A DNA stretch of 64,000 nucleotides, from NCBI GenBank assembly GCA_977017575.1, contig CDRNVI010000003.1, positions 186,001 through 250,000 on the forward strand. The letters run 5' to 3'. The notes beneath the pieces were generated by a model. The model did no database searches. It saw nothing but the letters and a program-made list of their open reading frames with translations, and was not told where the DNA came from. Position numbers and translations under genes: made by a program. Below are positions 23,756 to 48,068 of the stretch, piece after piece. The DNA comes from Paramoeba atlantica (lineage: Eukaryota > Protista > Discosea). Each line of letters begins with the position of its first letter. The stretch's first letter is position 1.

Positions 23756-23835
23756 GATACAGTTTCTGTACCTTGTTGATTTTTTTTATTTCCTACGTTT
23801 ATTCTCCCCATGGCAGAACTTGCCATCAAGGGACT
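23756..23835 (+). repeat. SL-core-headed repeat, diverged and truncated copy A
   Basis: GATACAGTTTCTGTACCTTGTTG at 23756-23778, then a T-rich tract and a short hairpin loosely similar to copies B-D. Confidence 0.7.
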
Positions 23836-24159
23836 CTACTGTGTAGTACTATACAGGGGGGGGGGGAAACTGACAAGGTCCGTATTTTGGCGTCCTGAGG
23901 CCGTTTGAGCTGATTTTTGTTGCAAAAGAGAGATTTCGTTCTGAATATCGTGTCTACGCTATTTGGACAATAAAATTGACAAAACATTATTTAACACGAT
24001 TAAAAGTAACACGATTAAAAACTCAACCCTGGGTTACCAAAAGTCAGTCGAATTAAAGGCATATAATCAATCCTCCCTGTACTCTTTATCATATTAAAGT
24101 CTTCACATTGCACTTCTTCGCCTACATAATGTAACGTTGGTCAATATTTCCAAGCAGCA

Positions 24160-25653: not shown

Positions 25654-28599
25654 TTATACATTGTGTATAAAATCCAAGATGCTCCGTATTTGAGATATGA
25701 GACCGTGCCTAGAACCTATTTCCACGTGCGTACCACCTTTGGCAAACCGTGAATTATTTGCGCTCGAACCAGATAAACGCACGAGCTCCTCATAATAAGA
25801 ACGTAAAGATTGCAATTCTGCTAAATTTCGGCTGGAAAACTTCTTAGAAAGAAAATCATCTAGACTCATAGCTATTTCCAACAGCTCGTTGTTACTTTTT
25901 TCGTAGTATTCGTACCTTGGTAGTCGAAGGTAATCTTTAATTTTCTCTGGGACAGCTAGCGGAGGTGTGTCAACTAAAAGATTCTCCTTTGAGTTTGTTG
26001 TCGGCGAACCTTCATTTAATTTTTTAGCGTCTTTGGATAATCCTTGGTTCTCATTTTCAATTGTGTTTGAGGGCTGTGCCTTAACGTTGTAATATTCACG
26101 AACTAGACTCTGCCAAAGTGGGGTAAGGACTTCATTCTTCCCATCGCTAAATATACCCATCCGAATAATATCCAGAGGACTACGACCTTCGGATTCAGTA
26201 TATTGACGAACTAATTCCAGTAATTTCTCAGGGTAGGTAGCCTGTGAAAGCTGACTGAACAATGAATTACTAGCCCCGTCGGTCTCAAAAAGAGAGTTGA
26301 GGAATTTGAAAATCCTACATCGTGTCAGCGAAAGCTCTGTACGACAATAAGGGGTAAGAACCTCTGGCCAACTTGAAGAGATCACGGTAACAGGATCAGG
26401 CAGAATTTCAATTTCAAGAACTTCACAATCCCAACGCTCCATCTCTGAGGGACACCGTTGCTCACTGCTATACCTACCAAGAGAAGTAGACAGGACGACG
26501 AAATCCGAAAGATAATGTCCAAATTTCACTCCAATGTCTATTCCAGACGGTTCACTAATGTCAAGCTCACGAAGGATGCGCCACTGACGTAAATGTGGCA
26601 TCCACACGATAAGAAAATTTTTGTCACCGCCAAGAGAACGATAAAAGACAGGAGACTTTCGATGTAGTGAATCATGTGGAAGGGGCATGTTGTAAAGTGC
26701 CTCCAATACAACATGCTTCTGACGTGAGTTCCCTCCAGGAGGAGACTCTATACGTGCAGAAGAGTGAGGAAAAACGGACTCGGGAAGAAAATCGATAGCA
26801 GAAGTGTGAATCCCACGTACGCGAAGACGCCTGTAGTGCGTTCTAACGCAGGGCTGGTCGTATTGAGTAAGCAACTGAATCAGTTTTTGATTTCGCTCCA
26901 TCAGATACTCCATGTTTTCAGTCCCTACTTTCTTCAATGAATAGACATTGGAATCTTGCACGGCTCTATCGTGGGCTACTAACCGTGGATCAAAAAGCAA
27001 GCTCACAAATGTATTCCAGTCCGACTTGTTCAATTCCAATTTATGGAGTAAATTAATGGGAGTGAAGTTTACGAAGGAGCGTTCCACATGGGGTGTGCAG
27101 TTCTGATGAAGAAAGAGAGCCCTCGTACGCAATTCGAAATCTCCAATGTATGCTTGAGGAAGTGTCCCGCTGCGCTTCCAAATGAATACCAGGCGATGAA
27201 CCGTAGTTCCAAGTCTCCACGCCAGGATGTATAAAGCGAAATTTATATATAATTCAGGGAAAATATGTGGAACTTCAGGCTCAGTAGCGCGCATTGAGTA
27301 TTTCTCGCAATTTTCGGTCGCGTTGAACATGTTTGTACGAATGGCAGCCATGTGTGCCTCGATCCAGCGACCTATCGCGCCATAGAATATGAATGTTTCT
27401 CGAAATGGCGTGAATTCCGAAACTGAAACTCTGACGTGCAACAACACGGTTAACAATGTGCATGCTGCGAAATCATCTGGGGCGATTTCTAGATTGGACG
27501 CTGGGTTCTGAAGAAAGACTTTCGCGTTGGAGGAGCAAATCAGTGCAATTTCAGGAGTGTCTATGTTTAGGATACATGGAGAAAGCGCTACTTGTGTAGC
27601 AAGCTGCTTGAGCAACGGAAATGCATCTTTCTCTGAAAACGGTTCAAAAGTATGGGTAGGGAGCGCAATGATAGGGTAAAGTTCGGCACCTGGTGTAGAT
27701 TCATTGTGTACAATACTAGGCAATGGGCTCGTCGCATCCATAGAGGAAAACGGGACATCCCAGCTCTGCATACCGATAGAGCTATCATGTGGCGCACTAT
27801 CATCTATTGTACACATTTTTCGTTGCAACTCAATGTGCTGTACAACTCTTCTCAAGGCGGCGTAGCTCATAATTCCGAAAGGGTGTATAATGTGAAAGAA
27901 GCATAATAGGGGCGCGCAAGATCCCCCAGAAACTGTGGCAAGTGGACTAACGCCACGCTGGGAGGCGTATGAGCAGAATGCTCTAAGAAGATCCGGATAT
28001 TGAGTCCATGAGCAAGGGACTTGCCCGGCAAGAAATCCTTGGCGTAAAGCAAAGACTGGAAGTGCTGTACTTTCGAACTCCTGTTTGTAGCCCGTAGGTA
28101 GTCGAAGGTCGCTCGTGCAATGTCCTGGAGTACTGACATGATCAAGCTTTACAACCTCTGAACCCTTATGCTCTACATGCCACTCCAAAACGCCGAGTCG
28201 AAAGTTATCAAGAGCTTCGAAAAGCTCTGCGTGATCGATTGATTGTACATTCTCCGTGTCAGCAAACTCACTGGCTCCATAGTAGTCCGAGTGGGCGGGC
28301 GCCGAATCGTTGTTTTCGTCGAAATCCGTCTCAGTTCCGTATTGCTGGGGTGCGTGTACATCGGAGAAGCAGCAAGGACAGGAATATAAAACATCATCCG
28401 TTCCGGGCACCCATTTCTCATTTTGTTGGCACGAGGCGCAGTGAGTAGGGCAAAATGCCCACCATCGAAGGTACAGGAGAGGGGAGAGCTGATAGTTTTG
28501 TAATGTGTTTCGCTCAAGGAACATTCCTTCCTGGGCTTGTGGTATGTGAAAAAGTGTACGGAAGAGCGTCTGGTGCTCCTCACGTGTCAGTCGATTCAT
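25654..28599 (-). CDS. Large hypothetical protein with N-terminal Cys cluster
   Basis: 981-aa ORF; CPTHCASC..CPCC; no family recognised. Confidence 0.7.
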   Translation of the reverse strand: MNRLTREEHQTLFRTLFHIPQAQEGMFLERNTLQNYQLSPLLYLRWWAFCPTHCASCQQNEKWVPGTDDVLYSCPCCFSDVHAPQQYGTETDFDENNDSAPAHSDYYGASEFADTENVQSIDHAELFEALDNFRLGVLEWHVEHKGSEVVKLDHVSTPGHCTSDLRLPTGYKQEFESTALPVFALRQGFLAGQVPCSWTQYPDLLRAFCSYASQRGVSPLATVSGGSCAPLLCFFHIIHPFGIMSYAALRRVVQHIELQRKMCTIDDSAPHDSSIGMQSWDVPFSSMDATSPLPSIVHNESTPGAELYPIIALPTHTFEPFSEKDAFPLLKQLATQVALSPCILNIDTPEIALICSSNAKVFLQNPASNLEIAPDDFAACTLLTVLLHVRVSVSEFTPFRETFIFYGAIGRWIEAHMAAIRTNMFNATENCEKYSMRATEPEVPHIFPELYINFALYILAWRLGTTVHRLVFIWKRSGTLPQAYIGDFELRTRALFLHQNCTPHVERSFVNFTPINLLHKLELNKSDWNTFVSLLFDPRLVAHDRAVQDSNVYSLKKVGTENMEYLMERNQKLIQLLTQYDQPCVRTHYRRLRVRGIHTSAIDFLPESVFPHSSARIESPPGGNSRQKHVVLEALYNMPLPHDSLHRKSPVFYRSLGGDKNFLIVWMPHLRQWRILRELDISEPSGIDIGVKFGHYLSDFVVLSTSLGRYSSEQRCPSEMERWDCEVLEIEILPDPVTVISSSWPEVLTPYCRTELSLTRCRIFKFLNSLFETDGASNSLFSQLSQATYPEKLLELVRQYTESEGRSPLDIIRMGIFSDGKNEVLTPLWQSLVREYYNVKAQPSNTIENENQGLSKDAKKLNEGSPTTNSKENLLVDTPPLAVPEKIKDYLRLPRYEYYEKSNNELLEIAMSLDDFLSKKFSSRNLAELQSLRSYYEELVRLSGSSANNSRFAKGGTHVEIGSRHGLISQIRSILDFIHNV

Positions 28600-35285: not shown

Positions 35286-35629
35286 AAAATTTAACCTGGA
35301 AAACGGAAAGATTATAGCCAAAAATAGCCGAATTTCGGGTACAAATGGGGTCATTTTCGCATATTTTTGCTCTCAGAGCACTAAATCCGACATTTGCGTG
35401 TGGGAAATCACTCGCAGGCATGAATGAAAGCCTACCGAACGTATTCGGTAAAGAATACGACTCCAACCATACCATTCTTTCGACACAAAAATGCCCCTTT
35501 AGGTCCGAAAAATACTTTTTCACCTTTTTTAGTCAAAAATGTGTCATTTTGAGGGGCGCACCACGGTTCGAAGAAGTGATACCTTGCGAAAACAACTGCG
35601 TAGAAAGCTAGTGTAGGTCCCAAACTATC

Positions 35630-36075
35630 AAAATACAATAGGGGAAACGATTTTGGAAAAATATTTTTTTTGTCATTTTTTTCGCCAAGTTGAATTTTTT
35701 TTCAAAAAACATTTTCCGAAAAAATCCGAACTTGGCGGACCCGTCATGCGGATACGCGGGGGGGTCACCCCCGGGTAGGGGGGTGGAAAATACGCGCCAA
35801 GACCCCGGCTACCCTTTCTGCGGTTTTTTTTCGAAAACTAATTTTTTCGAAAAAATTTGCTCGACCATGCCCCCCCCCCTGGACCCCCCCCCTGGACCCC
35901 CCCCATGGACCCCCCATTTTTTTCAAATTTTTTTTTCAGTTTTGGTCCACCGGAGCCCCCTTTTAAATTTTTTTCTTCTATTATATTACTGTGTTCCTCT
36001 TTATATTTTCACTGTTTTTGTTCACTTTTTTTTCAATAATCGAGTGTAGAGCGGTAGTTTTACAACCACCGCAAT
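35630..36075. mobile_element. Non-coding transposon-end-like segment
   Basis: Homopolymer-rich, GGACCCCCC repeated about 4 times; 35980-36075 recurs inverted at about 54564-54670. Confidence 0.45.
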
Positions 36076-36166
36076 AATTTATTAATAATCTATTAATAAT
36101 AATTATTATTACCGAACTGAATTATTAATAATCCTGCAGCTATGCATTCTGATCCTTACGAAATGA

Positions 36167-37000
36167 CTAGAGTTTCACATTCTCTGGAACATTCCCTTCT
36201 ACACGTAGCTCCGCGTTCCTCGAGATATCCAAATGCATTAAGTGTGGGAGATTCAATGGAAACACTACACAGCCTACGAAACAATTTTCACCCAGAATCA
36301 GTGTTCGCAGAGAAGGAGGCAAGCCACTAAAATCCAAGTTCCCCGAAAAACGGTTTTTACTAAGAGAGAGCTCTTGCAGTTCAATGGGTAGATGATTCAA
36401 CTGTATCGGACCGGTGAAAGCATTATTATCCAAGTAAACCCACTGCGCGAATGGTGGAAGTGTTGAAAGCAACAGTTCATCGGAGAACTCATTCTGTGAT
36501 GCCTGTATCTCTCTCAAATACCGCGGAAGTCCATTCAGTATCAGTGGCCCGTTTAATCTATTGGCGCGTACACTCAATCTTTTCAACCATGGAGGAAGCC
36601 CGGCGACGTGCAAGGGTCCCGTAAACAAATTCTCATCCAAGAGAAGACTCTGTAGCATCCGTGGGAGACATTCCGTGACAACGGGCCCTTGTAATTTATT
36701 TCCGCGTACAGTTTCTGTGCCCAGACTGAGCAACGTGAGTGTCTCAGGCAGGAACCTCCACTCAGGGACACCGCGAAGACTTCGGCCCTGCCACTGGATT
36801 TTGTTTACCTCTTCCTGCTCGTCCAGGGAACAGCTTACCCCGTCCCACGAACAGGCATGGGTGTGGATCTGCCACGTGGCATGTCGCGGGGTGATATGCT
36901 CTAGAAACCGATCCAACTGGTATTGAGGGGGGAGAGTGGCGGTTCGTATTCGGGCTCGTCGGGTGGGATCCGACGCGAGGGCCGTGTAGGCATGCGGCAT
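36167..37000 (-). CDS. Leucine-rich repeat protein
   Basis: RARIRTATLPPQ..CSWDGVSC cap and LRRs. Confidence 0.88.
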   Translation of the reverse strand: MPHAYTALASDPTRRARIRTATLPPQYQLDRFLEHITPRHATWQIHTHACSWDGVSCSLDEQEEVNKIQWQGRSLRGVPEWRFLPETLTLLSLGTETVRGNKLQGPVVTECLPRMLQSLLLDENLFTGPLHVAGLPPWLKRLSVRANRLNGPLILNGLPRYLREIQASQNEFSDELLLSTLPPFAQWVYLDNNAFTGPIQLNHLPIELQELSLSKNRFSGNLDFSGLPPSLRTLILGENCFVGCVVFPLNLPHLMHLDISRNAELRVEGNVPENVKL

Positions 37001-37170
37001 AATAAGTAAGAAAAACAGTTAAATCTTGCACCATAATTGCTTCGGTTCTACGGAACACGAATAAATGCATCGGTTGCATGTTACATTAAATCATTACATA
37101 ATGTAAAGATTTTTTATTATTCCATAGTTCGTACAGTATCTTTAACTGGATAGGTATTCATTAAAATCGA

Positions 37171-37275
37171 TACTTCCCCCCCCGTTTAAGGGCACCTGAT
37201 GCTTCGCAAAAAGCAAACTTAAGTGGGGAGAGCTTCCCGGGGGCGCTTAAAATTTAGTACGCGCGGGACAAAGTA
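37171..37275. mobile_element. MITE-like relic of the CCCCGTTTAAGNGCACC family
   Basis: TACTTCCCCCCCCGTTTAAGGGCACC resembles 58830 TACTGTCCCGCCCCGTTTAAGCGCACC. Confidence 0.45.
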
Positions 37276-37353
37276 CTCCCCGTCTAATGTAAAAGGGGAA
37301 CGCAAAATCAATAAACACATTCATGCAGCATATCTAGGTTCAACTCAGAAGTC

Positions 37354-38166
37354 TCATGGAAGTTGCGCGCCCCAATGAATTCCATGAGGCACAGCTCCAG
37401 GAGGGGTATATCCCGAAAAATTATTCATTCCAAGGTGAACTCTTAGAAAACGTGGGTCCAATCGTTTTCCACCCTTACGTTTTACACGGGGCGGTGATGG
37501 ACCGTACTCGCTAAGATCCCCTGAGTTCCTTACATGCATCCAACTGAAATCCACTGTACCATGAAAAAAATTGCGCTGTAGGTCGAGTCGACGCAACTTT
37601 TTCGGGAGTCTTTCCGTCAATTCGATATTACCAGTCAAAAAATTAGAAGACAAGTTGACAAAAACCATATTTGTCGGCAAAGTATTTAGGTCAATGGCTC
37701 CGCCAAATTGATTATTAGACAAGTCTATGTAGTTCATATGAGGGGGAAGCGAGTTTAACGCAATTGGCCCATTGTGTTGGTTGTTTCTGATATCTAAATT
37801 TTGCAATTCTGAGGGGAGAAATGTAAGATCAATACCACCTCCAAGCTCTTGATCAGGAACAGAGATAAGTTGTACGGTTTGGGGGAGATAAGTCCAGGAA
37901 AGATTACCCTGCATGGTATAATGCGGAAAATAACCCCATTCCAGAGAGCGCACTACTTGATTCTCATCACATGTTGTTCCTTTCCACGTACAGGGTGAAA
38001 CGTTCAGAGTGCGGAAGAAGCTACGTTTTGTCAACCTCCATGTTGGGTGACGACCCTTCAAGTTTTCCGTGAATTGCCATAGCGCAGCCTCTTGCGGAAG
38101 TAGAGACGCATCGACACGTCCGCGACGTACATCAGAGCCATCGTCAAGACTTCTCACAAACAACAT
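37354..38166 (-). CDS. Leucine-rich repeat protein (intact paralogue of the fragmented copy at 40.8-45.3 kb)
   Basis: RRGRVDASLLPQE..CTWKGTTC cap and LRRs. Confidence 0.88.
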   Translation of the reverse strand: MLFVRSLDDGSDVRRGRVDASLLPQEAALWQFTENLKGRHPTWRLTKRSFFRTLNVSPCTWKGTTCDENQVVRSLEWGYFPHYTMQGNLSWTYLPQTVQLISVPDQELGGGIDLTFLPSELQNLDIRNNQHNGPIALNSLPPHMNYIDLSNNQFGGAIDLNTLPTNMVFVNLSSNFLTGNIELTERLPKKLRRLDLQRNFFHGTVDFSWMHVRNSGDLSEYGPSPPRVKRKGGKRLDPRFLRVHLGMNNFSGYTPPGAVPHGIHWGAQLP

Positions 38167-38333
38167 AGAAACGTTATTTCACGAAGGAAAGATGTCAATG
38201 TTGGCTAAGAGTGAAGTGTTCATTGAAAAAAATGGAAATTTTGCCTTAATTTAATTAAAGCAAAATGAATTTACTCTTGTTCTGTTTCTTGGTTGAAGCA
38301 ATACAGTTTCTGTATTGCTCTGTGGTTTGAAGC

Positions 38334-38876
38334 AAGATACAGTTTCTGCACCTTGTTGGTACTTTTTCCTTAGTTAATCCTTTCTTTCCCCGGCAACGGG
38401 CATACTCTTACTGTATTTTTATGCCCGTTGACGGCCGGCACTAAGGTCGGAACTGTCCCTCTTGTCGCTGAAGCAGGGGACGCGCCTTCACCCCTCCCCG
38501 ACTCACTCCCCTGGAGTGAGTGTGCTTCCCCTTCTCGGCTTTCTTCGACTTTTTTCCTCTCCGAGAGGGCTATGCGTCACGGTGGCCTCCCTTGAGGACC
38601 ACTAGACGTGTCCTCCGCCGACGAGACTCTCGGCTCTCTGCACCTGGCGGTCACCCAGCTCTCCGCACCTCGGCTCTGTCGCAGCTCTCTGCACCCGGAT
38701 TGCCCCCGAAACTGTAATGTGGGGATTACGCATCCGGCTCTCTGCACCTGGGACGCCAGCTCTCCGCACCCGTACACCTCCGGCGAGGACGAAACCTCAC
38801 ATGATCCACCCGTCGTATGCGGGATAAGGAAACAAACAACACAATAAAACAAACAACATAAAACAAACAACACAAT
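38334..38876 (+). mobile_element. SL-exon-headed structured repeat, copy B, with A/C-rich tail
   Basis: Starts AAGATACAGTTTCTGCACCTTGTTG|GTAC; near-identical inverted copy at 44076-44610; five internal CTCTC(T/C)GCACC motifs; AAACAAACAAC-type tail at 38831-38876. Confidence 0.85.
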
Positions 38877-39007
38877 ATCTTATGAATATAAAATTTCCTA
38901 ATCCGAACCTAAGAGAATGGTATCGTTTTAGAAACTAACCCACTCACTACATTGGGCACTAGGAAAGAATATTCAAATTTCTAGTTGTGCACGACTTGCT
39001 ATTCAAT

Positions 39008-39844
39008 TCAATACGTCTCTTGCAGTATGAGCTTCAGAAATGCAAGTAGATCCTCCTCCTCAGCGGGACACGTGCTGTGATCCAAACCTTGATAGCTCTG
39101 AAACTTTACGGCTTTTAGACCATACGTCTGACGCAGCTCCGTGACAGAGGCCGTACTCCAGGCAAGAGGAATCACACCATCACAAGTACCGTGCGCAATC
39201 CATACGGGCGTGTCACAAACAGATGAGGGCATCGGGAGAACCCGACCCATTTCCTTCGCGAACGGAGCAACTGCCGCACGCCCCGCAAGGTACCCACTAA
39301 GTGCCACAACCCCAGCAAGCGGAGGAGAGGACGTTAATAGGGTAAACAAACTCAACGCGGCGCCCTGACTAAACCCCCCAAGCACGATCTTCGGCGGGCC
39401 CTCTCCAGATTTCGCCCGTACGGCGGCCTCGCGTTCGACCAAATCGGTTAGGTATAACGAGGAGAGGGTGAGGGATTCAACATCCTCACGAGCGCTCACG
39501 TCCAGCCCATGGATGTCGTACCATGCAGGCATGATGGCACCCCCGTTGAGTGTGACCGCCCGCGAGGGGGCCGTGGGGCAAACGAACCGCACATGGGGGA
39601 GGGAGAGACTGAGTTGTCGCATGAAGGGCGTCCACCCCGCGCCCGTGTCGCCGAGACCATGGGCAAAGATAAACGTAGCGCGGTGGGAGTCGGTGGGCTC
39701 CACAACGTGTGGGGTACCAAAGTGGGTTGTGAAGCCTTCGCGCACCCGGGAGCGGAGTTCGCTTTTTTCTACACACCCAGCGGAGGTTAGATTCATCGCG
39801 TGCAGCAGGGCTTGTAAACGAGCCGTGCTTAAAGTCTGAAGCAT
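39008..39844 (-). CDS. Acyl-protein thioesterase / lysophospholipase (alpha/beta hydrolase)
   Basis: HGLGDTGAGW, MPAWYDI, GGFSQGA nucleophile elbow, HGTCDGVIP, LDHST. Confidence 0.92.
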   Translation of the reverse strand: MLQTLSTARLQALLHAMNLTSAGCVEKSELRSRVREGFTTHFGTPHVVEPTDSHRATFIFAHGLGDTGAGWTPFMRQLSLSLPHVRFVCPTAPSRAVTLNGGAIMPAWYDIHGLDVSAREDVESLTLSSLYLTDLVEREAAVRAKSGEGPPKIVLGGFSQGAALSLFTLLTSSPPLAGVVALSGYLAGRAAVAPFAKEMGRVLPMPSSVCDTPVWIAHGTCDGVIPLAWSTASVTELRQTYGLKAVKFQSYQGLDHSTCPAEEEDLLAFLKLILQETY

Positions 39845-40138
39845 GGAAGAAAGAAAGCGGGGAAATGGCTATGAAGTACGCGGAAACACGTTTCCAAAGA
39901 AATCGAATAAAAATCGACCTAGGCTTGACTAAAAGAGTTGTACCGCACCCTATTATAAAACAAACAATGCGTTTATCAAAGAGATAGGATATATTTGGGT
40001 AAACATGTCATGTTTCGGTGCAGCTGTAAATTGTAAAAATGGCCTAGCAGCTTTAAACTGATTGTATGATAGACAAGTATTATAGACAACTCATTCTACT
40101 CAACAGTAAGATAACAAATACTTGGTGCAAGTTTGATG

Positions 40139-40576
40139 TCATTTACTCATTGTGCTCAAAAGTGCTATTTCCCAAATCGAAGCCGTTCTACTAAGATTGA
40201 GACGAGATTGGGTAAGAGTTCTAATTTTACTTGTCAAAAGTAGAGCATCTCTGTCATCTTCGATTTTCTTGCAGACATTTAAAGCGCCAATCATGAGACG
40301 ATATACGTCGGTATCGTTTCGCAAAAAAATCGCGATGAGAAAATGCACCAGCGAACGTCGAAAAAATCCCAGTGATAAAAACAACTCTGCGGAGTATCCG
40401 TGATAGTGCGCATTGTAGGGCTGATGTAAGTTCAACAATTCCATATCAGCAATAGGCTTCATGCGTTTTAGTGACAAATCGGACAACAACAGCTGAATAT
40501 CGTGCGCTGTGCTCATCTCAATCATATTTTCAGCGAGTTCCAAATGTTGAGATCGCGTTATCTTTTCTGCAAGCAT
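40139..40576 (-). CDS. Small hypothetical helical (TPR-like?) protein
   Basis: 145-aa coding-strand ORF; weak support only. Confidence 0.4.
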   Translation of the reverse strand: MLAEKITRSQHLELAENMIEMSTAHDIQLLLSDLSLKRMKPIADMELLNLHQPYNAHYHGYSAELFLSLGFFRRSLVHFLIAIFLRNDTDVYRLMIGALNVCKKIEDDRDALLLTSKIRTLTQSRLNLSRTASIWEIALLSTMSK

Positions 40577-40846
40577 TTTTTTTGTACGCAGTAACCGTAG
40601 TCACAGTGTTGAAGACTAAATTAAAAACATCAGCATTTGTTTTGTTTTGTTTTGTGAATATGAGGTCCGGAGACAAGAAGGGCTATGTAGCACCTTCGAT
40701 GAATATTCATCAAAAGTGCGGCACCTTCAATGAACGCTCATCGAAGGTACTACGTACCCACAAGAAAAAATGACGTAAATGGACGCGTTATTTTAAAGGC
40801 AAAAATTATGTGGAATTTACTGTTTCCACATTCAAATCAGAAGTTA

Positions 40847-41110
40847 CTAAAAATCTGAACAATAAAAAATCCTGGGAAAAATCCCAGGAGGTGCGTATCC
40901 CGTAAAATTATTCCTTCCAAGATAAGCATTTAGAAGACGTGGGTCCAATCCATTTCCACACTTACGCTTTTCAGGGGGCGGCGATGGACCGTACTCGCTA
41001 AGATTCTCTCCATTCCTTTCATGTATCCAACTCAGATTCACGATTCCACAAAAATCATTGCGCTGTAGGTCGAGTCGACGCAGCGGCTTTGGGAGGTTAC
41101 CGGCGAATTT
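40847..41110 (-). pseudogene. LRR pseudogene, C-terminal fragment
   Basis: LRRLDLQRNDFCGIVNLSWIH..LSEYGPSPP..LDPRLL..GRNNFTGYAPPG closely matches the C-terminus of 37354..38166. Confidence 0.85.
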
Positions 41111-41334
41111 CGTTGAGTTTCCTCTTCTTCTTCTTCTTCGTTGAGTACTCAACGAACGGGATTCCGATTTCTGAAGTCATAAGAACTGCGGAGTGCGCGC
41201 ACTGAACCTATGTCTGCCACTTCCGCAGGATCGTGTATTATATTTTTTGACTATAAAATATCTCCATTTTTCCTTACGATAAAATGACATTTCTTTTGGT
41301 ATCTCTCTGCTTTTCTTCTTTTGCTATGGAACTC

Positions 41335-41915
41335 CCGCCAGAAGATCAAAACGAACAAGACCGGCACTCTCCTGAAATTAATGAGGCCGAGCGACTCATG
41401 ACGGTATTCAATGACGCCTTTGATCGTATTGCAGAACGTTTTCCACATGAGCGGCGTTCCACAGAGTTTGGCGAAATTTGCGTGCCAGACGACTTTGTAC
41501 CGGATTTGTTTGCGTTCGGGGGTGGCGAAGCATTGGCTGCATTCAACAAAGGGAGGATGCGGTAACCTGGATGAGATCACATGGCCTGTTTGAAGATGCC
41601 GTGTATTACTTCCATGAGACGGATTATCTCCGAGATATGCCAGGAAAGCCTGACATGATGGTTTGCCACCACCGTCTTCCGAATGAAAGAAACCCACTCG
41701 AACATTCTTGACACCTGCCATGCTCCTTCTTCTTTGGGCAGACGCCGCGAACCATTTATATACTAGACAGATTTGCCAGAACCGTGGAGTGCAACGGAAG
41801 GTGATGCAGAAAATTATTCGAGCGCTTGGCAACGCAGCCTTGCATCAGGAGGAGTCTTCGACCTACAAATTTGCCCAGGATGCAGGTGGACAAGACATTT
41901 ATTGGGAAATGGAAG
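41335..41915 (+). pseudogene. Degenerate Merlin-like transposase 5' part, cut by the Tc1 insertion
   Basis: AVTWMRSHGLF resembles the 25.4 and 55.4 kb remnants; LLLLWA..RQIC..GV..K; GGQDIYWEME just before the TA at 41916. Confidence 0.35.
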
Positions 41916-41981
41916 TACAACCGTGGGAACGTTCTATTGCTTCACCCTTAATGGACCAAAATGGTTCAAACTTAATACTTA

Positions 41982-43282
41982 GAGGGGTGAAACCTGCTCG
42001 GTTCTAGCGTGTTCGCCCGTGTTCGGTCGAGTTAAAAGTTCGGACACTTAAGTTGTGGAGAATATGCAGTTTCTTTCTAATCTTTTATTTTGTATTTTGT
42101 AATTGTATAGTGTAATTTGACTACCAAAAAAATACATATTTTAATAGCAGTTTTTTGTTTCGCACTTAGTTTTTCGGGCTCACTTTGAATGGAACACGAT
42201 TGGCCCCCGATCAAAACGTTTACATCGAAGACGTCTACGGAAATCCTTCCTCGGACACTTATGAACGCCTTCGTAAGTGGGTGCTCCACCAGATGAAAGA
42301 AACCTTCTTGATACCACTAACGCGTAAGGAAATAGTGGATATCAAGTTTGCGGGACTGAGCGCGGCCGAAAAAAATAGCATAAAATATGCTGAGAAGCGT
42401 ATGCCACCTGCGGATCTCCTAGATCGTATAGAAGAGAACATCTTGGAAACCTGTGCAGAATGGCTGGTAGCGCGACGGAATCTTGTTCAAGACATGGCGC
42501 ATACTGGTGTGACGCGTTCTTTGTGTGGAGTGCCCATCGACGAGCGTATATTATTGGAAGCTCTGGTCTTGTTGACTCAATCTCGTGATACGGGATTATT
42601 GTTCTTCAATGATGCTGAGCGCTCAATGCTCAACGGGGTAAAGGAAGAAGAAATGCCAGCTTATTGGCAGTGGAAAAGCTCGTGCGGGAAATGGGGATTA
42701 AACATGAAAGATGAATGATTGACACTCCTTGATGTCGATCACCCTATGTACAAGAATGGGCATCTCGCGAGGATTGTTTCTGCAAGTTTCATAAGGGGGG
42801 TGCGAATGACTCTCTCTCTATTAAGAACTACAGAACTCAGGTAACACAAGAGCTTCAAATCAAAGGAATTGAAACTGTTGGAAAGTGTTCATCAAAGTAT
42901 TAAAGAAGCCCCTAAGACGTATGTAAAATTAAGTAAAAAGCAATTGAAAGAGAAAAATAAAAGTTTGAAGGAAGGCGAAAGCAGGATTTGAAAATGAAAA
43001 AGCAAGAACGAAGAAAGAAGCATTCTGCTCTGGTAAAAGAGTTTCGATTAGACCAAAGCACTCCAAATTAGTAAAGCTAAATTATACGTGTACTGTATGT
43101 CGTGGTTTTGACAGTTTTTGCCCCATTTTAAAATCATGTACTTTACGTAATTTTTTGGGAGGTCATGGAATTTGCAATACAAATCTCAAATTTGACTAAG
43201 TATTTTTTCCCACTGAAATGGCTTAGGAGTAGCGTGTTCGCCCGTGTTCGCCCAACTGACGTTTCTGCAGGTTTCACCCCTC
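41982..43282 (+). mobile_element. 1301-bp TIR element with TTA target duplication (PIF/Harbinger- or Zator-like geometry)
   Basis: Perfect 16-bp TIR GAGGGGTGAAACCTGC (41982-41997 and 43267-43282); TTA at 41979-41981 and 43283-43285; removing it restores the Tc1 stop. Confidence 0.9.
42185..42718 (+). CDS. Cargo ORF of the 1.3-kb TIR element, unknown function, probably frameshifted
   Basis: 177 aa; an apparent continuation LTLLDVDHPMYKNGHLARIVSASFIRG.. follows in another frame; no DDE motif seen. Confidence 0.5.
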   Translation: MNGTRLAPDQNVYIEDVYGNPSSDTYERLRKWVLHQMKETFLIPLTRKEIVDIKFAGLSAAEKNSIKYAEKRMPPADLLDRIEENILETCAEWLVARRNLVQDMAHTGVTRSLCGVPIDERILLEALVLLTQSRDTGLLFFNDAERSMLNGVKEEEMPAYWQWKSSCGKWGLNMKDE

Positions 43283-43806
43283 TTAGTAAGTCCCCCATCG
43301 CTCTGATGACTGCTCTCAAACGACGGGACATGCTTTGGACAAGAGGGAGGCATGCACTTGGAGGAACTTTCGCCCATGCTTTTTGGGCGCGTTCCTGCGG
43401 GGGGGTCGGGGTGATCTGCCATTGCCTTTTTCAGTTCAATCCATAGGTTTTTTATGGGGTTTAAGTCGGGAGACTGAGGGGGCCAGTCAAGCACACACAG
43501 CTCCTGCGAATTAATAAAATCGCGAGCCTTCTTACTCGTGTGCTTCGGAGCGTTATCCTGTTGGAAGACGATCCGATCCTTCGCGACACCCAGCTTTTGT
43601 ACGGAAGGGGCAAATTTTGCTGCAGTATTTGAGCGTACTGCTCTGCGTTCATATTCCCGTGAACCAGCTCAGTGGTTCCCACACCGTGCTCCATCATGCA
43701 ACTCCATATCATGATGGAGCCGCCACCATACTTGAGCATACCTTGTGTGTTTCGCTCCGATATCTCCTCCCCAAAGTCTACCCAAACCCACCAGCTACCA
43801 TCAATA

Positions 43807-43927
43807 ACTCGGTGTACTGCGCAACAAAGATCTATAATAGGATCTACAATCTATAATAGGATCTATAATAGGAGAATAAAACCAAGTTGCTCTATTTACT
43901 ACATTACTTATGCGCAGTACACCGAGT
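43807..43927. mobile_element. 121-bp MITE with TA duplication
   Basis: 17-bp perfect TIR ACTCGGTGTACTGCGCA; TA at 43805-43806 and 43928-43929; internal GATCTATAATAG repeats. Confidence 0.85.
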
Positions 43928-44075
43928 TATTTACGAAAGATTGCCATTGAAACACTTGAAAACGGATCTTCACTTCGAATATTTACGAAGTGAGCTCAAC
44001 ACAATGGGCCCATCTAGATGGTTCCTTCGGAATTGTTTTATCATGCACTTATAGTGCAGAGATTTACTCACCATG

Positions 44076-44612
44076 TCCTTATCCCGCATACGACGGGTGG
44101 ATCATGTGAGGTTTCGTCCTCGCCGGAGGTGTGCGGGTGCGGAGAGCTGGCGTCCCAGGTGCAGAGAGCTCGGTTGTCATGTGCAGGTGCAGAGAGCCGG
44201 ATGCGTAATCCCCATATTACAGTTTCGGGGGCAATCCGGGTGCAGAGAGCTGCGACAGAGCCGAGGTGCGGAGAGCTGGGCGACCGCCAGGTGCAGAGAA
44301 CCGAGTCTCGTCGGCGGAGGACACGCCTAGTGGTCCTCAAGGGAGGCCACCGTGACGCATGGCCCTCTCGGAGAGGAAAAAAACAAGTCGAAAAAAGCCG
44401 AGAGGGGGAAGCACACTCACTCCAGGGGAGTGAGTCGGGGAGGGGTGAAGGGGTGAAAGCGCGTCCCCTGCTTCAGCGACAAGAGGGACAGTTCCGACCT
44501 TAGTGCCGGCCGGCAACGGGCATAAAAATACAGTAAGAGTATGCCCGTTGCCGGGGAAAGAAAGGATTAACTAAGGAAAAAGTACAAACAAGGTACAGAA
44601 ACTGTATCTTTT
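44076..44612 (-). mobile_element. SL-exon-headed structured repeat, copy C
   Basis: Minus strand begins AAAAGATACAGTTTCTGTACCTTGTTTGTAC; near-identical to copy B; abuts LRR coding sequence. Confidence 0.85.
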
Positions 44613-44613
44613 T

Positions 44614-44810
44614 CAAATTTTGCAACTCCGAGGGGAGAAACGTAAGATCAGTACCACCTCCGAGCTTTTGACCAGCAACATTTAAACCTTGTACGGTTTG
44701 AGGAAGATGAACCCAGGAAAGAGTACCTTCCTTTGGTATAGTGAGATAGAAAACCCCAGTCTAGCATGCGTCAAATAACATGCTGTTCGATTCGAATCAC
44801 ACCAGGGTCC
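44614..44810 (-). pseudogene. LRR pseudogene, middle fragment
   Basis: Nucleotide similarity to about 37797-37995 of the intact LRR gene. Confidence 0.75.
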
Positions 44811-44888
44811 AGGCAACTCGCCCTCTCTTTACGCAGCCGGAGGGGCGCACTGCAACCGACCGCCGCCTCGCGATAATGCGAGGCAGAG

Positions 44889-45173
44889 TCACGCCCAGTG
44901 GTGCTCAAGGGAGGCCACCATAGCGCATAGCTCCCGGGAAAAGACAGGCACGAGAAGAAGAGAGCCGGGGAGGGAAGAAGACTCACTCAAGGAGTGAGCC
45001 GGGGAGGGGTGAAAAGTCAGAAGTACGTCCCCTACTTCCACGACAAAGAGGGACAGTCCCTGATACCCGTCAGCCGGAAACGGGTAATTAAAGGGAAAAT
45101 GTATGCCCGTTTCCGGGAAAAGAAAGGAAGGGCTAGCAAAATGTACCAACAAGGTACAGAAACTGTACCTTTA
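44889..45173 (-). mobile_element. SL-exon-headed structured repeat, copy D (diverged subfamily, partial)
   Basis: Minus strand begins TAAAGGTACAGTTTCTGTACCTTGTTG|GTAC; the same three hairpins as B and C with diverged loops. Confidence 0.8.
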
Positions 45174-45262
45174 TGCCGTAGCGCAACTTCTTGAGGAAGG
45201 AGAGATGCATCGACACGTCCGCGGCGTAGATCAGAGCCATCGTCCAAACTTCTTACAAACAT
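45174..45262 (-). pseudogene. LRR pseudogene, N-terminal fragment
   Basis: MFVRSLDDGSDLRRGRVDASLLPQEVAL is almost identical to the N-terminus of 37354..38166. Confidence 0.88.
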
Positions 45263-45739
45263 AAAAGGAGAAATGAGGAAAACCAAGAGGTGATATCGTC
45301 ATAATGGAATTCTCTATTTTTTTAAAAGAACAGAAAAGAGAAGAGCTTGCAAAAAATTATAAAATAACGTTCAAGTTACTTCATTGAAAAAAGCTTTCAC
45401 GCTCCCTGAGATATTATTGATGTCTATGATAATGTAAATTTTGTCAAAATATATAGAAAGTATAATAATAATATAATATTTTATAATGTTAATGTAAAAT
45501 GTATTCAAAAATATTTTTAATTTTTTTTTAAAAATAAGTTTTCTTCCTGAAGAAAGAAATGCGAATGAAAGTTTCATTATGAAACTGTCATTAGTTTTTT
45601 GTTTTTATGTAACATATTTTGCTGAGTAACAGGAAGCCCAGTTTTTTAAAGATTTGTAACGTTTGAATATCCGCACACATGCATAAATGATATGAAAGAA
45701 TTTTAATTCACAAAATTACCTAAAAAACGTAAAGATAAA

Positions 45740-46471
45740 TCAATCGATGCGTACCGAACCAGGTAATGGCTTTGGTAGATAATCGAATATTCTATTTTTC
45801 GTGAGATCAATATGCTTTATGGACTTCGGAAGATAACGAAAATCGCAAAATCCAGAAAATTGATTGGCTTGAAGAAAGAGGTACTGGACCTCGTTTGGGA
45901 GTTTAGTCAAGTCTAGGCTTCCCGAAAAGAAGTTGTTGCTCACAGACACGCAAAGCAGAGCACTCGGAAGCGTAGTCAGGTTCAATGAACCTTCTAGCTC
46001 ATTTGTGTGCACGGAAAAATCCTCCATGGAGGGAGAAAGGCGATCCAAGTCTATAATCCCGGAGAATTTATTTCTGGACAGCCACAGAACTGCCAAAGAA
46101 GGCGGAAGATTCGTAAGGCCCAACGAACCGTGTAGCTTATTAGTGTTAAAGCGAAGTGTGTGTAACTCTGGAGGCAACTCGTCGAGATTAATGGATCCGG
46201 TCAGACTATTATCTCCAAGAATAAGTTGCTTGACGGACAGCGGAGCTCGCTCCAGATCTAGACTGCCACGTAAGTTTTTGCTTTCCCAGAGAATGAACCG
46301 GACTTCTTTTCCTGAATCATCATCGCAATGCACACCCTCCCAGTCACAAGCCGGAGTGTGAGTGTTCCACGTTGCCCTTGGGTTTTCTATCGACTCAATG
46401 AAAACCCCTAATTGGAATTCTGGAGGGAGCTGGGATCCCCGAACTCTACCCTTTCGTATATTTACGTCCAT
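45740..46471 (-). CDS. Leucine-rich repeat protein
   Basis: RKGRVRGSQLPPE..CDWEGVHC cap and LRRs. Confidence 0.88.
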   Translation of the reverse strand: MDVNIRKGRVRGSQLPPEFQLGVFIESIENPRATWNTHTPACDWEGVHCDDDSGKEVRFILWESKNLRGSLDLERAPLSVKQLILGDNSLTGSINLDELPPELHTLRFNTNKLHGSLGLTNLPPSLAVLWLSRNKFSGIIDLDRLSPSMEDFSVHTNELEGSLNLTTLPSALLCVSVSNNFFSGSLDLTKLPNEVQYLFLQANQFSGFCDFRYLPKSIKHIDLTKNRIFDYLPKPLPGSVRID

Positions 46472-46760
46472 CGACTAGAGCGTTGCTTTGATCCGAATCT
46501 TCAGGGGTAAGAAGCTAATGAAGTAAATAAGAGGTCTAAATAAAAGGTCTGTATATTACTATATCAAATTTATGAAGGAATGCGTAAACAATGAAGTTGC
46601 GAGATCGCAAGTTGAAGTACTTTTCAAAAATTACTGGTGTACTTATTTTTATTCTAAGAGGTTGCTGTAATTTTACGTGTAAGATCTAGTGTATTCCGTA
46701 TGGAGAAAAGTGACAGCCTAACGTTCACCAAATGGTACTGTCGCTCTTGTGCTCATTTGT

Positions 46761-48068
46761 TTACTTACACTGAATAGAGCATGATATTCCAGAGGCAGCG
46801 CGAAATATGCGGTCGGAAACTGCAGCTACTATATTATCAAGACAATCTTCTTTTTGATGTACGATCGGAAGAAGAATTGCCTTGGCGCAGGGGACATTTT
46901 CTGCCATTCGCATAAATGCATATAAGGATCTCGCTGCATCTTCTTCGTTCTCATTCACAGCCAGTTCAAAGTATTGTTTGGCGTGAGCGCGAAGTGAAAT
47001 GAAATGTGCCCCGTAGTCAATGAGAACACAATCTTCAATAGACAATGCCAAAAAAGAATCGCTCTTCAGATCGGGGACCACACGTATTTGAAAACCTGGT
47101 TTCTCAAGACCCTTTTGCTGCTCGCATCTCACTTTATTTAGTTCATTTAAAGAAAGAAGATAAGCGGGTATGCGCGGGGCATAGTGTGTAAGGAGCTGAC
47201 CTGGTGCATCCAGGGTCATGGTTCGGCTACTTTCATAGTGTGCTTCCCGAACGGAAATAGCAATATCTGCAAGACTGTGATCATCAAGACATCGGCGTAA
47301 ATTGCTAAATGTCACTTTTCCTCTTCGTAAAATTTCAATGTACTTACAGTTGTGTGTGAGATTCGTCGTATCCGGAGTGTCTTCTGGATGCACGCGTACA
47401 ACAGTGGATTCAATTCCAACAGAGGGATTTGCTTGCGCACCCCCGTTTATAATTAACAGCGATTCATGTCCGGAAAACAGGCTCAAGTCTTTCTCATAAT
47501 CCTCGAAATCTGAAGCCACATGTGCCGCAGTGGTGGGAGACACATGACCGAACCTATTTGCACTTGGGGCCGCGATGGGAAGTTTACTCTGCTGAAGCAA
47601 TCGTAGCGCAGCCATGTTGGATGGCACACGAACTCCCACCGTTCTGATCTGAGAACGAGACATTTGAGTCGATTGGCTAGATGCCCGGTTAGGAGATGGA
47701 ATGCCGCATACTACATTGGGGACGTGTGCAGCTGCAGGATGGACTATAGTAAGGGGGCCCGGCCAAAACGTTTTGGCCAAGGCATTGATGACATTAACAC
47801 AAGACGACGGCAAACGAGGGAACACGTTTGAGGAAGGTAAATCCCACAGCGGTAGGGCAAGAGATAAATCGGAGACGTGGACTATTAGTGGATCAGTTGG
47901 CGGTCGACCCTTGAGAGCAAAAATCTTTTTACAAGCTGATGCATCTAATGCGTTGGCACCTAATCCGTACACCGTTTCTGTAGGAAAGGCAACAAGTTTA
48001 CCCTCCTGCAAAGCTTGAGAACAACGCGTCACGTTTCCCTCAGTGTAATCCAAGCACTCAATGATCAT
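46761..48068 (-). CDS. SUA5: Threonylcarbamoyl-AMP synthase (Sua5/YrdC)
   Basis: VAFPTETVYGLGA, KGRPPTDPLIVH, FWPGPLT, GVRVP, APSANRFG, GIESTV, APGQLLTHYAP. Confidence 0.95.
   Translation of the reverse strand: MIIECLDYTEGNVTRCSQALQEGKLVAFPTETVYGLGANALDASACKKIFALKGRPPTDPLIVHVSDLSLALPLWDLPSSNVFPRLPSSCVNVINALAKTFWPGPLTIVHPAAAHVPNVVCGIPSPNRASSQSTQMSRSQIRTVGVRVPSNMAALRLLQQSKLPIAAPSANRFGHVSPTTAAHVASDFEDYEKDLSLFSGHESLLIINGGAQANPSVGIESTVVRVHPEDTPDTTNLTHNCKYIEILRRGKVTFSNLRRCLDDHSLADIAISVREAHYESSRTMTLDAPGQLLTHYAPRIPAYLLSLNELNKVRCEQQKGLEKPGFQIRVVPDLKSDSFLALSIEDCVLIDYGAHFISLRAHAKQYFELAVNENEEDAARSLYAFMRMAENVPCAKAILLPIVHQKEDCLDNIVAAVSDRIFRAASGISCSIQCK

What the first reader, a model, noticed from the sequence alone, without database searches (positions are those of the whole stretch)
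38334..45173. SL-RNA-headed dispersed element: candidate new SINE-like family or mobile SL orphon
Copies B (+, 38334-38830), C (-, 44076-44612) and D (-, 44889-45173) begin with (A/T)AAG(A/G)TACAGTTTCTG(T/C)ACCTTGTT(G)|GTAC. The consensus ACAGTTTCTGTACCTTGTTG matches 17 of the last 20 nt of the T. brucei SL exon (ACAGTTTCTGTACTATATTG) and is followed by GTA, as at the SL donor. None has the AAC(T/C)AA cap end: each keeps only about 25-28 nt of exon, near where SLACS/CZAR/CRE retrotransposons cut SL genes (around nt 11-12). The body has hairpins, a CTCTC(T/C)GCACC tandem region and, in B, an A/C-rich tail. B and C are near-identical (recent) and D is a diverged subfamily. I know of no described SL-derived short mobile element in kinetoplastids. 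It could be a non-autonomous passenger of an SL-targeting retrotransposon.
Basis: partly seen in the sequence, partly recalled or inferred. Interest (0 to 1): 0.9.

Follow-up and report, generated by a model that had tools for sequence, protein, structure and literature searches.

The report
Spliced-leader-headed retroposons riding R2-like LINEs
Three copies of a 0.6-kb non-coding jumping element, each starting with the last 25-28 letters of this protist's own spliced leader, are real and one is a recent insertion, but they are passengers of R2-like retrotransposons and are not copies of the spliced-leader gene.

Summary
B (38334-38830, +), C (really 44032-44613, -) and D (really 44806-45174, -) each start with the last 25-28 nt of the genome's true 38-nt spliced leader (SL). 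I found that SL in about 35 tandem SL genes.

The elements belong to a dispersed family of roughly 450-480 copies. They are 0.56-0.61 kb long, non-coding and strongly folded. There are at least four subfamilies.

They are not SL-gene copies. Beyond the exon only GTA matches the intron, and the SL genes sit in separate arrays. None of 35 SL genes is interrupted.

An R2-like LINE (reverse transcriptase plus restriction-like endonuclease) has the same SL head, starting at SL nt 11. It also shares the 3'-terminal hairpin motif with the B/C subfamily.

Copy C is 99.3% identical to another copy. It is absent from a contig of another sample, where it replaced 4 bp of a leucine-rich-repeat gene without a target duplication.

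A few SINE copies carry a full-length SL. Tandem "relict" SLs begin right after the SL's own AG. Copy D carries a rare SL-gene variant. Together these point to capture of the mature SL by trans-splicing. How the head is renewed, and why most heads start at nt 11, is unsolved.

The scan had already reported this family from other parts of this genome.

The parts
38334..38830 (+). Copy B, B/C subfamily. Head is SL nt 14-38 (38334-38358, one mismatch), then GTAC and the body. It lacks the terminal 3' hairpin.
   Evidence: 90% identity to L011 over 537 aligned nt, element positions 8-542.
38831..38878 (+). A/C-rich microsatellite-like tail of copy B (AAACAAAC-type).
   Evidence: Similar ACAA-type tails sit on L011 and L026.
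38301..38314 (+). Orphan partial SL head (SL nt 17-30), 20 nt upstream of copy B. The 9-nt flank TTGAAGCAA is repeated with it. This looks like a stuttered 5' junction.
   Evidence: Similar stacked partial heads occur upstream of L012 and L028.
44032..44613 (-). Copy C, a full-length B/C-subfamily element of 579-582 nt. Head is SL nt 11/13-38 (44586-44613). The 3' hairpin is ATCTCTGCAC-TATAA-GTGCATGA, followed by an AAAACAA tail.
   Evidence: (99.3% to L011), and 31 (a contig in run X2 skips this interval).
44806..45174 (-). Copy D, another subfamily. Head is SL nt 11-38 (45147-45174) with the A17G variant. It is 3'-truncated at element position ~373, together with about 110 bp of the host gene.
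   Evidence: (95% to L003).
23756..23778 (+). Site A: a 23-nt SL relic (nt 16-38) joined to an unrelated body, not to GTAC. It is not a member of this family.
   Evidence: The body has one other genomic copy, and part of it is a ~120-bp terminal repeat of a DNA transposon family.
44611..45265 (-). Remains of the leucine-rich-repeat host gene broken by D and C. Protein matches to the paralogue lie at 45179-45265, 44735-44788 and 44611-44730.
   Evidence: tblastn with the paralogue; the empty allele restores the frame ...LQNL-DI-RRNHLDG.
37354..38166 (-). Intact paralogue of the broken LRR gene. Copy B lies 168 nt upstream of its start codon, in the opposite orientation.

Best explanation
B, C and D are copies of a non-autonomous, non-coding retroposon. 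It is SINE-like in role but not a classical Pol III SINE. R2-type LINEs of the same genome, which encode a reverse transcriptase and a restriction-like endonuclease, copy it into new sites.

Shown:
- The family has several hundred dispersed copies with a sharp common 5' end inside the SL.
- It shares a conserved 3' hairpin (ATCTCTGC-stem-loop-stem-ATGAYAA) and a short A-rich or microsatellite tail with R2-like LINEs.
- The LINE carries the same SL head.
- Insertion replaces a few target bases and makes no duplication.
- Copy C is a recent, polymorphic insertion.

Inferred:
- The head comes from the mature SL, added by trans-splicing to element RNA. It does not come from an SL gene.
- The LINE enzyme recognises the 3' hairpin and reverse-transcribes up to the SL.
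- The unpaired first ~10 nt are usually lost, so most heads begin at nt 10-12. That is where the SL starts to pair with complementary sequence in the element.
- Copies may be re-spliced at the AG inside their own SL relic (ACAG|). Rare elements with a full SL plus a 16-nt relict would be the uncollapsed products.
For: True SL gene:
- The exon is 38 nt and the intron starts GTATGAGAAGC. The element head equals its last 28 nt.

Family:
- The head+GTAC 24-mer gives 518 hits at up to 3 mismatches. That figure includes ~35 SL genes and a few other SL-headed elements.
- Copies are 560-610 nt. Subfamilies share the first ~290 nt.

Partner LINE:
- L071/L072 have RVT_1. Their best solved relatives are R2 proteins, and the alignment includes the CCHC and PD..E..K tail.
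- Their last ~27 nt match the B/C-type end.
- The 5' ends L083 and L084 start at SL nt 11.
- A related LINE in another public assembly has the same head and the same 3' motif.

Mobility:
- C is 99.3% identical to L011.
- A contig in run X2 skips 44032-44613 and has 4 other bases there. Its flanks are 98-99% identical to the window.
- 28 of 30 copies have no long target duplication.

Head from the mature SL:
- Many different bodies are joined exactly after G38.
- Some SINE copies carry SL nt 1-38 or 3-38.
- Heads vary in start. Of 93, 34 start at nt 11 and 11 reach at least nt 9.
- Of 28 tandem SL-SL junctions, 14 start right after ACAG and 2 right after AAAG.
- D's A17G occurs elsewhere only in 2 SL genes.

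Structure:
- Both the SINE and the LINE 5' ends fold with the SL as one arm (z = -5.5 each).
- The SINE alignment shows 2 compensatory pairs.
Against: - There is no RNA evidence. The one probable RNA run shows the SL on another mRNA but no SINE body.
- The matching LINE subfamily has only 3 copies in the assembly, against hundreds of SINEs.
- Partners of the other SINE subfamilies were not identified.
- No source locus with an AG acceptor in front of GTAC was found among 122 bodies. Simple trans-splicing at the original site therefore cannot renew the head. The re-splicing-plus-collapse step is conjecture, and only one SINE copy with a relict was seen.
- The nt-11 mode is unexplained. It coincides, counted from the 3' end, with the SLACS/CRE insertion point recalled from the literature.
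- D's variant is a single case.
Confidence: 0.65

Rival explanations
1. The head is not added by trans-splicing. It is picked up during reverse transcription: the R2-like enzyme jumps from the 5' end of element RNA onto the 3' end of the free SL exon (the first-step splicing intermediate). Alternatively it switches by homology from the element's old head onto any SL-bearing RNA.
For: - R2 enzymes are known for end-to-end template jumps (own knowledge).
- L050/L051 show a stuttered SL 5' end, ACTTTAACGATA twice, directly after a poly(A) of an upstream element. That pattern fits jumping.
- Stacked partial heads lie upstream of B, L012 and L028.
- It would renew heads in register without needing an AG, which fits the lack of unspliced source loci and D's SL-gene variant.
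Against: - The SL-body junction is invariant, with no untemplated bases, in nearly all copies.
- Relict SLs start preferentially right after the two AGs of the SL. Splicing predicts that; jumping does not.
Confidence: 0.15
2. The SL piece was captured once in the ancestor of the family and of its LINEs. Since then it has simply been inherited as part of the element, for example as one arm of a 5' hairpin needed for copying. Variation in head length is ordinary 5' truncation.
For: - All 122 bodies examined in three subfamilies have the same junction GTTG|GTAC.
- Body sequence complementary to the SL is conserved.
- Recurrent head variants such as G16A occur in several copies.
Against: - Pure inheritance with truncation predicts ever shorter heads, not a sharp mode at nt 11 alongside rare full-length heads.
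- It does not explain relict SLs at AG positions in front of at least 8 kinds of body.
- It does not explain D's match to a minor SL-gene variant.
Confidence: 0.12
3. One reading: a SINE built from the SL RNA gene itself (exon, splice donor and intron). It would be cut near nt 11 by an SL-targeting CRE/SLACS-type element and carried along.
For: - GTA follows the exon, as in the SL gene.
- GGUAC can pair with GUACC much as GGUAU can in the true SL RNA.
- The modal head of 28 nt equals the exon part downstream of the SLACS/CRE site in trypanosomes (own knowledge; PMC12278014 for the site specificity).
Against: - There is no similarity to the intron beyond GTA.
- The partner LINE has the same head followed by AATT, not GT.
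- None of 35 SL genes is interrupted.
- The partner is R2-like, not CRE-like.
- In a CRE-type insertion the downstream exon would adjoin the element's 3' end, not its 5' end (inference).
Confidence: 0.05

Closest known systems
R2 and non-site-specific R2-like LINEs, with their short non-autonomous derivatives (SIDEs)
   Same: - The partner encodes a reverse transcriptase, a CCHC knuckle and a restriction-like endonuclease, and its best solved relatives are R2 proteins.
- Insertion makes a small target deletion and no duplication.
- The passenger shares the LINE's 3' end.
- Dispersed R2-like elements are described in PMC7650587.
   Different: - The passenger is not an internally deleted LINE. 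Only the SL head and the last ~27 nt are shared.
- Both the LINE and the passenger begin with spliced-leader sequence.
- There is no rDNA target.
CRE clade (SLACS, CZAR, CRE1, CRE2) of trypanosomatids
   Same: - They are kinetoplastid LINEs with a restriction-like endonuclease and a link to the SL (PMC12278014).
- The modal 28-nt head equals the exon part downstream of their insertion point (own knowledge).
   Different: - Those elements insert into SL genes and end in poly(A) with target duplications.
- Here the copies are dispersed and the SL genes are intact.
- Tails are short A-rich or microsatellite repeats.
- No SLACS/CRE protein was among the named relatives.
Relict spliced leaders of dinoflagellate retrogenes (Slamovits and Keeling 2008; PMC5585692)
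   Same: - DNA copies of trans-spliced RNA carry the SL at their 5' end.
- Tandem relicts are truncated at the AG inside the SL, taken there as a sign of repeated recycling.
- Here 16 of 28 tandem junctions lie right after an AG.
   Different: - There the copies are cellular genes. Here they are retrotransposons and their passengers, which appear to use the SL as a constant structural part.
- Most heads here are single and start at nt 11, not at an AG.
LINE/SINE pairs that share a 3' stem-loop (stringent type, e.g. eel UnaL2/UnaSINE1; own knowledge)
   Same: - A short conserved 3' hairpin plus a simple-repeat tail is shared between a coding LINE and a short non-coding element.
- The stem covaries between subfamilies: GCAC/GUGC, GCGC/GCGC and GCAG/CUGU.
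   Different: - There is no tRNA, 5S or 7SL head.
- The partner is of the R2 type, not an APE-type LINE.
RIME, NARTc and SIDER (ingi/L1Tc-derived non-autonomous retroposons of trypanosomatids)
   Same: They are short non-autonomous retroposons of kinetoplastids that land in and near genes (PMC12278014, PMC2323293).
   Different: - Those elements start with the 77-79-nt Pr77 signature and depend on APE-type ingi/L1Tc.
- This family has an SL head and an R2-type partner.

Membership tests
Classical SINE | Head derived from tRNA, 7SL or 5S RNA with an internal Pol III promoter | tested here: not met
   No tRNA in 36000-47000. No Rfam family in the window. The head is SL exon sequence.
Classical SINE | Short, non-coding, dispersed, many copies | tested here: met
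   Copies are 560-610 nt. About 450-480 heads lie on many contigs with unique flanks. ORFs over the copies are only the short, overlapping ones on both strands that the ORF listing lists mechanically. No protein-family match was sought for them.
Classical SINE | 3' end shared with a partner LINE | tested here: met
   The last ~27 nt of the B/C type match the end of the R2-like LINE L071/L072. The motif is also on L085.
SL RNA gene or orphon | Complete exon including nt 1-10 | tested here: not met
   B, C and D start at nt 14, 11-13 and 11. Only a few copies genome-wide reach nt 1-3.
SL RNA gene or orphon | Intron homologous to that of the true SL RNA | tested here: not met
   Local alignment of the intron against four bodies falls within the shuffle range.
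SL RNA gene or orphon | Conserved upstream region of the SL genes | tested here: not met
   SL genes share ...CCCTTGTT upstream. The elements have unrelated flanks.
CRE/SLACS clade passenger | Insertion into SL genes at a fixed exon position | tested here: not met
   35 of 35 SL genes are continuous through nt 27. The copies lie in genes and spacers.
CRE/SLACS clade passenger | Poly(A) tail and target-site duplication | tested here: not met
   Tails are ACAA, AAAT or TA repeats or a few A. 28 of 30 copies have no long duplication. Copy C replaced 4 bp of target.
R2-superfamily LINE (the partner) | Reverse transcriptase followed by a CCHC motif and a restriction-like endonuclease | tested here: met
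   RVT_1 E = 4e-33. R2 structures are the best hits. A second, weak stretch covers CxxC..H..C and RPD..E.T..K..KY. The endonuclease part rests on that weak alignment and on motif reading.
R2-superfamily LINE (the partner) | Specific target (28S rDNA) in R2 proper | tested here: not met
   Flanks of L071, L072, L082-L085 are unrelated to each other.
Retro-copy of trans-spliced RNA (relict SL type) | SL joined to the body exactly at the last exon base | tested here: met
   All 122 bodies examined are preceded by the 3' end of the SL, in nearly all as the exact junction ...GTTG|GTAC. A few lack one base or carry a substitution in the last SL bases, copy C among them (...GTTT|GTAC).
Retro-copy of trans-spliced RNA (relict SL type) | Tandem relicts truncated at an AG of the SL | tested here: met
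   This holds for the genome as a whole: 14 + 2 of 28 junctions. Only one of them is on this SINE family.
Retro-copy of trans-spliced RNA (relict SL type) | Element RNA that carries the SL | not testable with these tools
   No RNA run held the SINE body.

The most novel reading that the evidence does not exclude
These retrotransposons and their passengers may depend on SL trans-splicing as a step of their life cycle. Each DNA copy would be transcribed by read-through and re-capped by trans-splicing at the AG inside its own SL relic. The SL then pairs with complementary element sequence to form a 5' hairpin that the R2-type machinery uses. The unpaired first ten bases would be trimmed, which would set the nt-11 start. 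That would be the first mobile-element family built around the host's spliced leader.
Probability: 0.3. Interest if true: 0.8.

Novelty: new variant of a known kind. Interest (0 to 1): 0.6.

Why it matters
In the literature I could search, kinetoplastid mobile elements are INGI, CRE, VIPER and TATE, and the only non-autonomous elements described derive from INGI (PMC12278014).

Here a free-living-type relative has dispersed R2-like LINEs with hundreds of unrelated non-coding passengers. All of them begin with the cell's own spliced leader, and at least one insertion is still polymorphic and breaks a gene.

It shows three things:
- Trans-spliced RNA is fed back into the genome outside dinoflagellates.
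- The SL gives a built-in sequence tag for dating and tracing retroposition.
- It raises a testable question: how does an element without a promoter or an acceptor site keep regaining a leader?

The coincidence of the 28-nt head with the SLACS/CRE cut position may bear on how SL-specific LINEs arose.

Tried and rejected
- Rfam over the window found nothing. tRNA scan found nothing.
- A search for long target duplications in 30 copies found only two candidates, both in repetitive flanks. Duplications are therefore not a family feature.
- SL intron against SINE body showed no signal.
- A search for an unspliced source gene (AG before GTAC) in three subfamilies found none among 122 bodies. The pattern's first letter excluded G, so about a quarter of sites went unseen.
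- A search for SL genes occupied at nt 10/11 found none of 35.
- Linking SL-headed loci to reverse-transcriptase loci by BLAST mostly failed, because the loci were too short.
The partners of the D-type and L002-type subfamilies therefore stay unidentified.
I used a leading H instead.
- One paper search failed on a two-letter term.
- The SL core as a text string occurs in no paper of the library.
- RNA evidence: run X5 holds only the SL on another transcript.
- Site A was considered as a fourth copy and rejected. It has a different body.
- The organism's name was not established, because run and organism names are coded.


Full report
**What is in the window.** The 20-nt core ACAGTTTCTGTACCTTGTTG occurs four times in the window, allowing up to 3 mismatches, and never in 100 shuffles. 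Three of these sites (38339 +, 44605 -, 45166 -) are followed by GTAC and a shared body.

BLAST with genomic copies sets the true limits:
- B is 38334-38830.
- C is 44033-44611. The run that lacks it skips 44032-44613.
- D is 44806-45174.

C is 99.3% identical to a copy on another contig (L011). D is 95% identical to L003 and belongs to another subfamily. The CTCTCYGCACC motif is real, with 5 copies each in B and C against 0.02 expected. B ends in an AAAC-type tail and lacks the terminal hairpin that C has.

**The true spliced leader.** Searching the window's own genome found SL genes with a 38-nt exon, AACTTTAACGATAAAGATACAGTTTCTGTACCTTGTTG. It is followed by GTATGAGAAGCTTCG, the canonical start of a kinetoplastid SL intron (that it is canonical is my own knowledge). 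About 35 such genes lie in arrays, mostly of 2.56-kb units. The element head is therefore an exact copy of the last 28 nt of the host's own SL. After the exon the elements share only GTA with the gene. Local alignment of the intron against four element bodies scores no better than shuffled introns. The elements' upstream flanks are all different and lack the SL genes' conserved upstream sequence. The elements are not SL genes, orphons or pieces of the SL repeat.

**The family.** The head plus GTAC gives 518 genomic hits at up to 3 mismatches and none for the reversed control. About 35 of these are SL genes and a few are other SL-headed sequences, which leaves roughly 450-480 copies. In 30 fetched copies, similarity starts 8-13 nt before ACAG and ends 555-607 nt after it. 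At least four subfamilies share the first ~290 nt at 75-85% identity and differ in the 3' half. All of them end in the same kind of motif: ATCTCTGC, a short stem-loop, ATGAYAA, and a short A-rich or simple-repeat tail. The stem differs between subfamilies but stays paired.

**The partner.** Among reverse-transcriptase loci, L071 and L072 end in ATCTCTGCAC-TATAA-GTGTATGACAAA followed by (AAAT)n. This matches the last ~27 nt of the B/C subfamily. Their open frame has RVT_1. Its best solved relatives are R2 proteins, with a second weak stretch over the CCHC knuckle and the PD..E..K endonuclease region. The nearest named relatives in the large protein search are R2-type, and no SLACS or CRE protein appeared.

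The 5' ends of this LINE, found with its first 150 nt, begin with ATAAAGATACAGTTTCTGTACCTTGTTG. That is SL nt 11-38. They then continue with AATTATTTTT... and a start codon, in two copies with unrelated flanks. A third copy is shorter. A 75%-identical LINE in another public assembly (L085) has the same head, a related 5' UTR and the same 3' motif with a (TA)n tail. LINE and passenger therefore share both ends, and the LINE's head is not followed by GT.

**Mobility.** In run X2, a contig of 660 nt lies on 43860-44031 and 44614-44801, with 1 and 4 differences. It skips 44032-44613 and has four other bases (TATC on the + strand) in between. Read on the gene's strand, this restores ...LQNL-DI-RRNHLDG.... 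That matches the intact paralogue at 37354-38166, which reads LQNLDIRNNQHNG. The paralogue itself is only 81% identical at the DNA level, so the contig is an allele and not a paralogue. Copy C is therefore a recent, polymorphic insertion. It replaced 4 bp and made no target duplication, as R2-type insertions do. In 28 of 30 other copies no long duplication was found either. C and D both sit in this broken LRR gene. D and about 110 bp of the gene were lost together. B lies in a spacer, antisense to its neighbours.

**Where the head comes from.** Several lines point to the mature SL.
1. Many unrelated bodies are joined exactly after the last exon base.
2. Head length varies. Of 93 heads listed with their upstream bases, the counts by starting position are as follows.

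| Head starts at SL nt | Copies |
|---|---|
| nt 8 or further 5' | 9 |
| nt 9 | 2 |
| nt 10 | 14 |
| nt 11 | 34 |
| nt 12 | 13 |
| nt 13 | 8 |
| nt 14 | 7 |
| nt 15 or later | 6 |

   A few copies carry nt 1-38 or 3-38. Templates must therefore carry more SL than most copies keep.
3. Another LINE family carries the whole SL directly behind the poly(A) of an upstream element.
4. Tandem SL-SL junctions are concentrated right after the SL's two AG dinucleotides. Of 28 junctions, 14 start at nt 23 and 2 at nt 17. They stand in front of at least eight kinds of body, including one B/C-type SINE and an R2-like LINE. This is the signature described for recycled dinoflagellate retrogenes (PMC5585692).
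5. D's head has A17G. The only other genomic occurrences of that variant are two SL genes. This is a single case, with roughly a 1-2% chance for a random change.

**What does not fit a simple story.** None of 122 bodies in three subfamilies is preceded by anything but the SL. There is therefore no source gene with an AG acceptor, and the copies themselves have TTG, not AG, at the junction. The head must be inherited, renewed in register, or both.

One possibility, which is inference only, runs as follows. Splicing occurs at ACAG inside the relic. The 16-nt direct repeat then collapses during reverse transcription, and the rare relict-bearing copies are the products that did not collapse. Template switching onto SL-bearing RNA is a rival. 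Stuttered heads upstream of B, L012 and L028 and a doubled SL 5' end in L050/L051 show that such switching happens.

The sharp mode at nt 11 is also unexplained. Two observations bear on it. First, in both the SINE and the LINE the SL is one arm of a 5' hairpin formed with complementary element sequence. The z-score is -5.5 in each case. In the SINE alignment, SL nt 19-26 pair with GRRACUGU in 27 of 29 copies, GUACC pairs with GGUAC, and a long hairpin shows two compensatory pairs. In two subfamilies the pairing reaches nt 11, so the lost part may simply be the unpaired tail. Second, 28 nt is also what lies downstream of the SLACS/CRE insertion point in trypanosome SL genes (my own knowledge). 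No SL gene here is interrupted, so the link is only a lead.

**Comparison and novelty.** The pieces are each of a known kind: an R2-type LINE, a passenger sharing its 3' hairpin, and relict leaders from retroposed trans-spliced RNA. The combination is not described in the papers I could search. A 2025 survey lists only INGI, CRE, VIPER and TATE, with INGI-derived non-autonomous elements, for trypanosomatids and Bodo saltans (PMC12278014).

This scan had already reported the same family from other windows of this genome, with the same overall reading. I re-derived each point here. I added the head-start tally, the intact-SL-gene test, the AG-relict tally, the lack of source genes and D's SL-gene variant.

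**Limits.** The organism's name is coded. It is a euglenozoan with kinetoplastid-type SL genes, which is inference. No RNA evidence exists for the elements. Counts from pattern searches are lower bounds.

Noticed in passing
window 23756-24130: A 23-nt SL relic (nt 16-38) is joined to a body that has only one other genomic copy (99%). Positions 59-189 of that body are a ~120-bp repeat found at least 40 times, often as inverted pairs 0.7-1.5 kb apart. It looks like the terminal repeat of a DNA transposon or MITE family.
   Followed up: partly
window 43186-43960: Remains of a Tc1/mariner-type transposase lie here: DDE_3 at E = 8.5e-05, below Pfam's cut-off, with the WPPQSPDLNPIKNLW motif. Inverted copies of GCGCAGTACACCGAGTTATT lie near 43800-43960, next to the broken LRR gene.
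   Followed up: partly
L047 (G000:C11:1-9000) 1244-1545, 4183-4468, 7076-7280: Each SL-gene repeat unit on this contig holds an internally deleted, 5'-truncated D-type element in antisense, about 250 nt downstream of the SL gene. The family therefore invaded the SL array before the array was homogenised.
   Followed up: partly
G000:C97:23404-23450 and 25948-25994: Two of about 35 SL genes carry A17G in the exon. Two others on C11 carry A30C, and these are second SL genes 297 nt behind the first in a unit.
   Followed up: partly
L049 (G000:C1:9000-15500): A 5.1-kb tandem repeat has SL nt 2-38 sitting between two copies of the same ~35-nt sequence (ACTTTTCTTATTTGTATTTCGCACGAATAAAAGT). It looks like a retro-copied mRNA placed next to its own unspliced 5' region.
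   Followed up: no
L050, L051, L032 and 213 hits: A second LINE family carries the complete SL directly after the poly(A) of an upstream element, often in head-to-tail arrays spaced 2.3-4.9 kb apart. In L050/L051 the first 12 SL bases are doubled.
   Followed up: partly
window 36167-46471: A cluster of leucine-rich-repeat genes and fragments lies on the minus strand (36167-37000, 37354-38166, 40847-41152, 44000-45286 broken, 45740-46471). An Abhydrolase_2 gene (39008-39844) and a Sua5/YrdC gene (46761-48068) lie between and beside them.
   Followed up: partly
window 35549-35589: A 41-nt stretch here is identical to the 3' flank of copy L023 on another contig, so a further repeat family borders some copies.
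   Followed up: no
G000:C20:57440, C35:33557, C63:378805: Triple SL stacks occur: the SL 3' end, then nt 23-38, then TACCTTGTTG. The last junction is not behind an AG, so it more likely reflects slippage than splicing.
   Followed up: no
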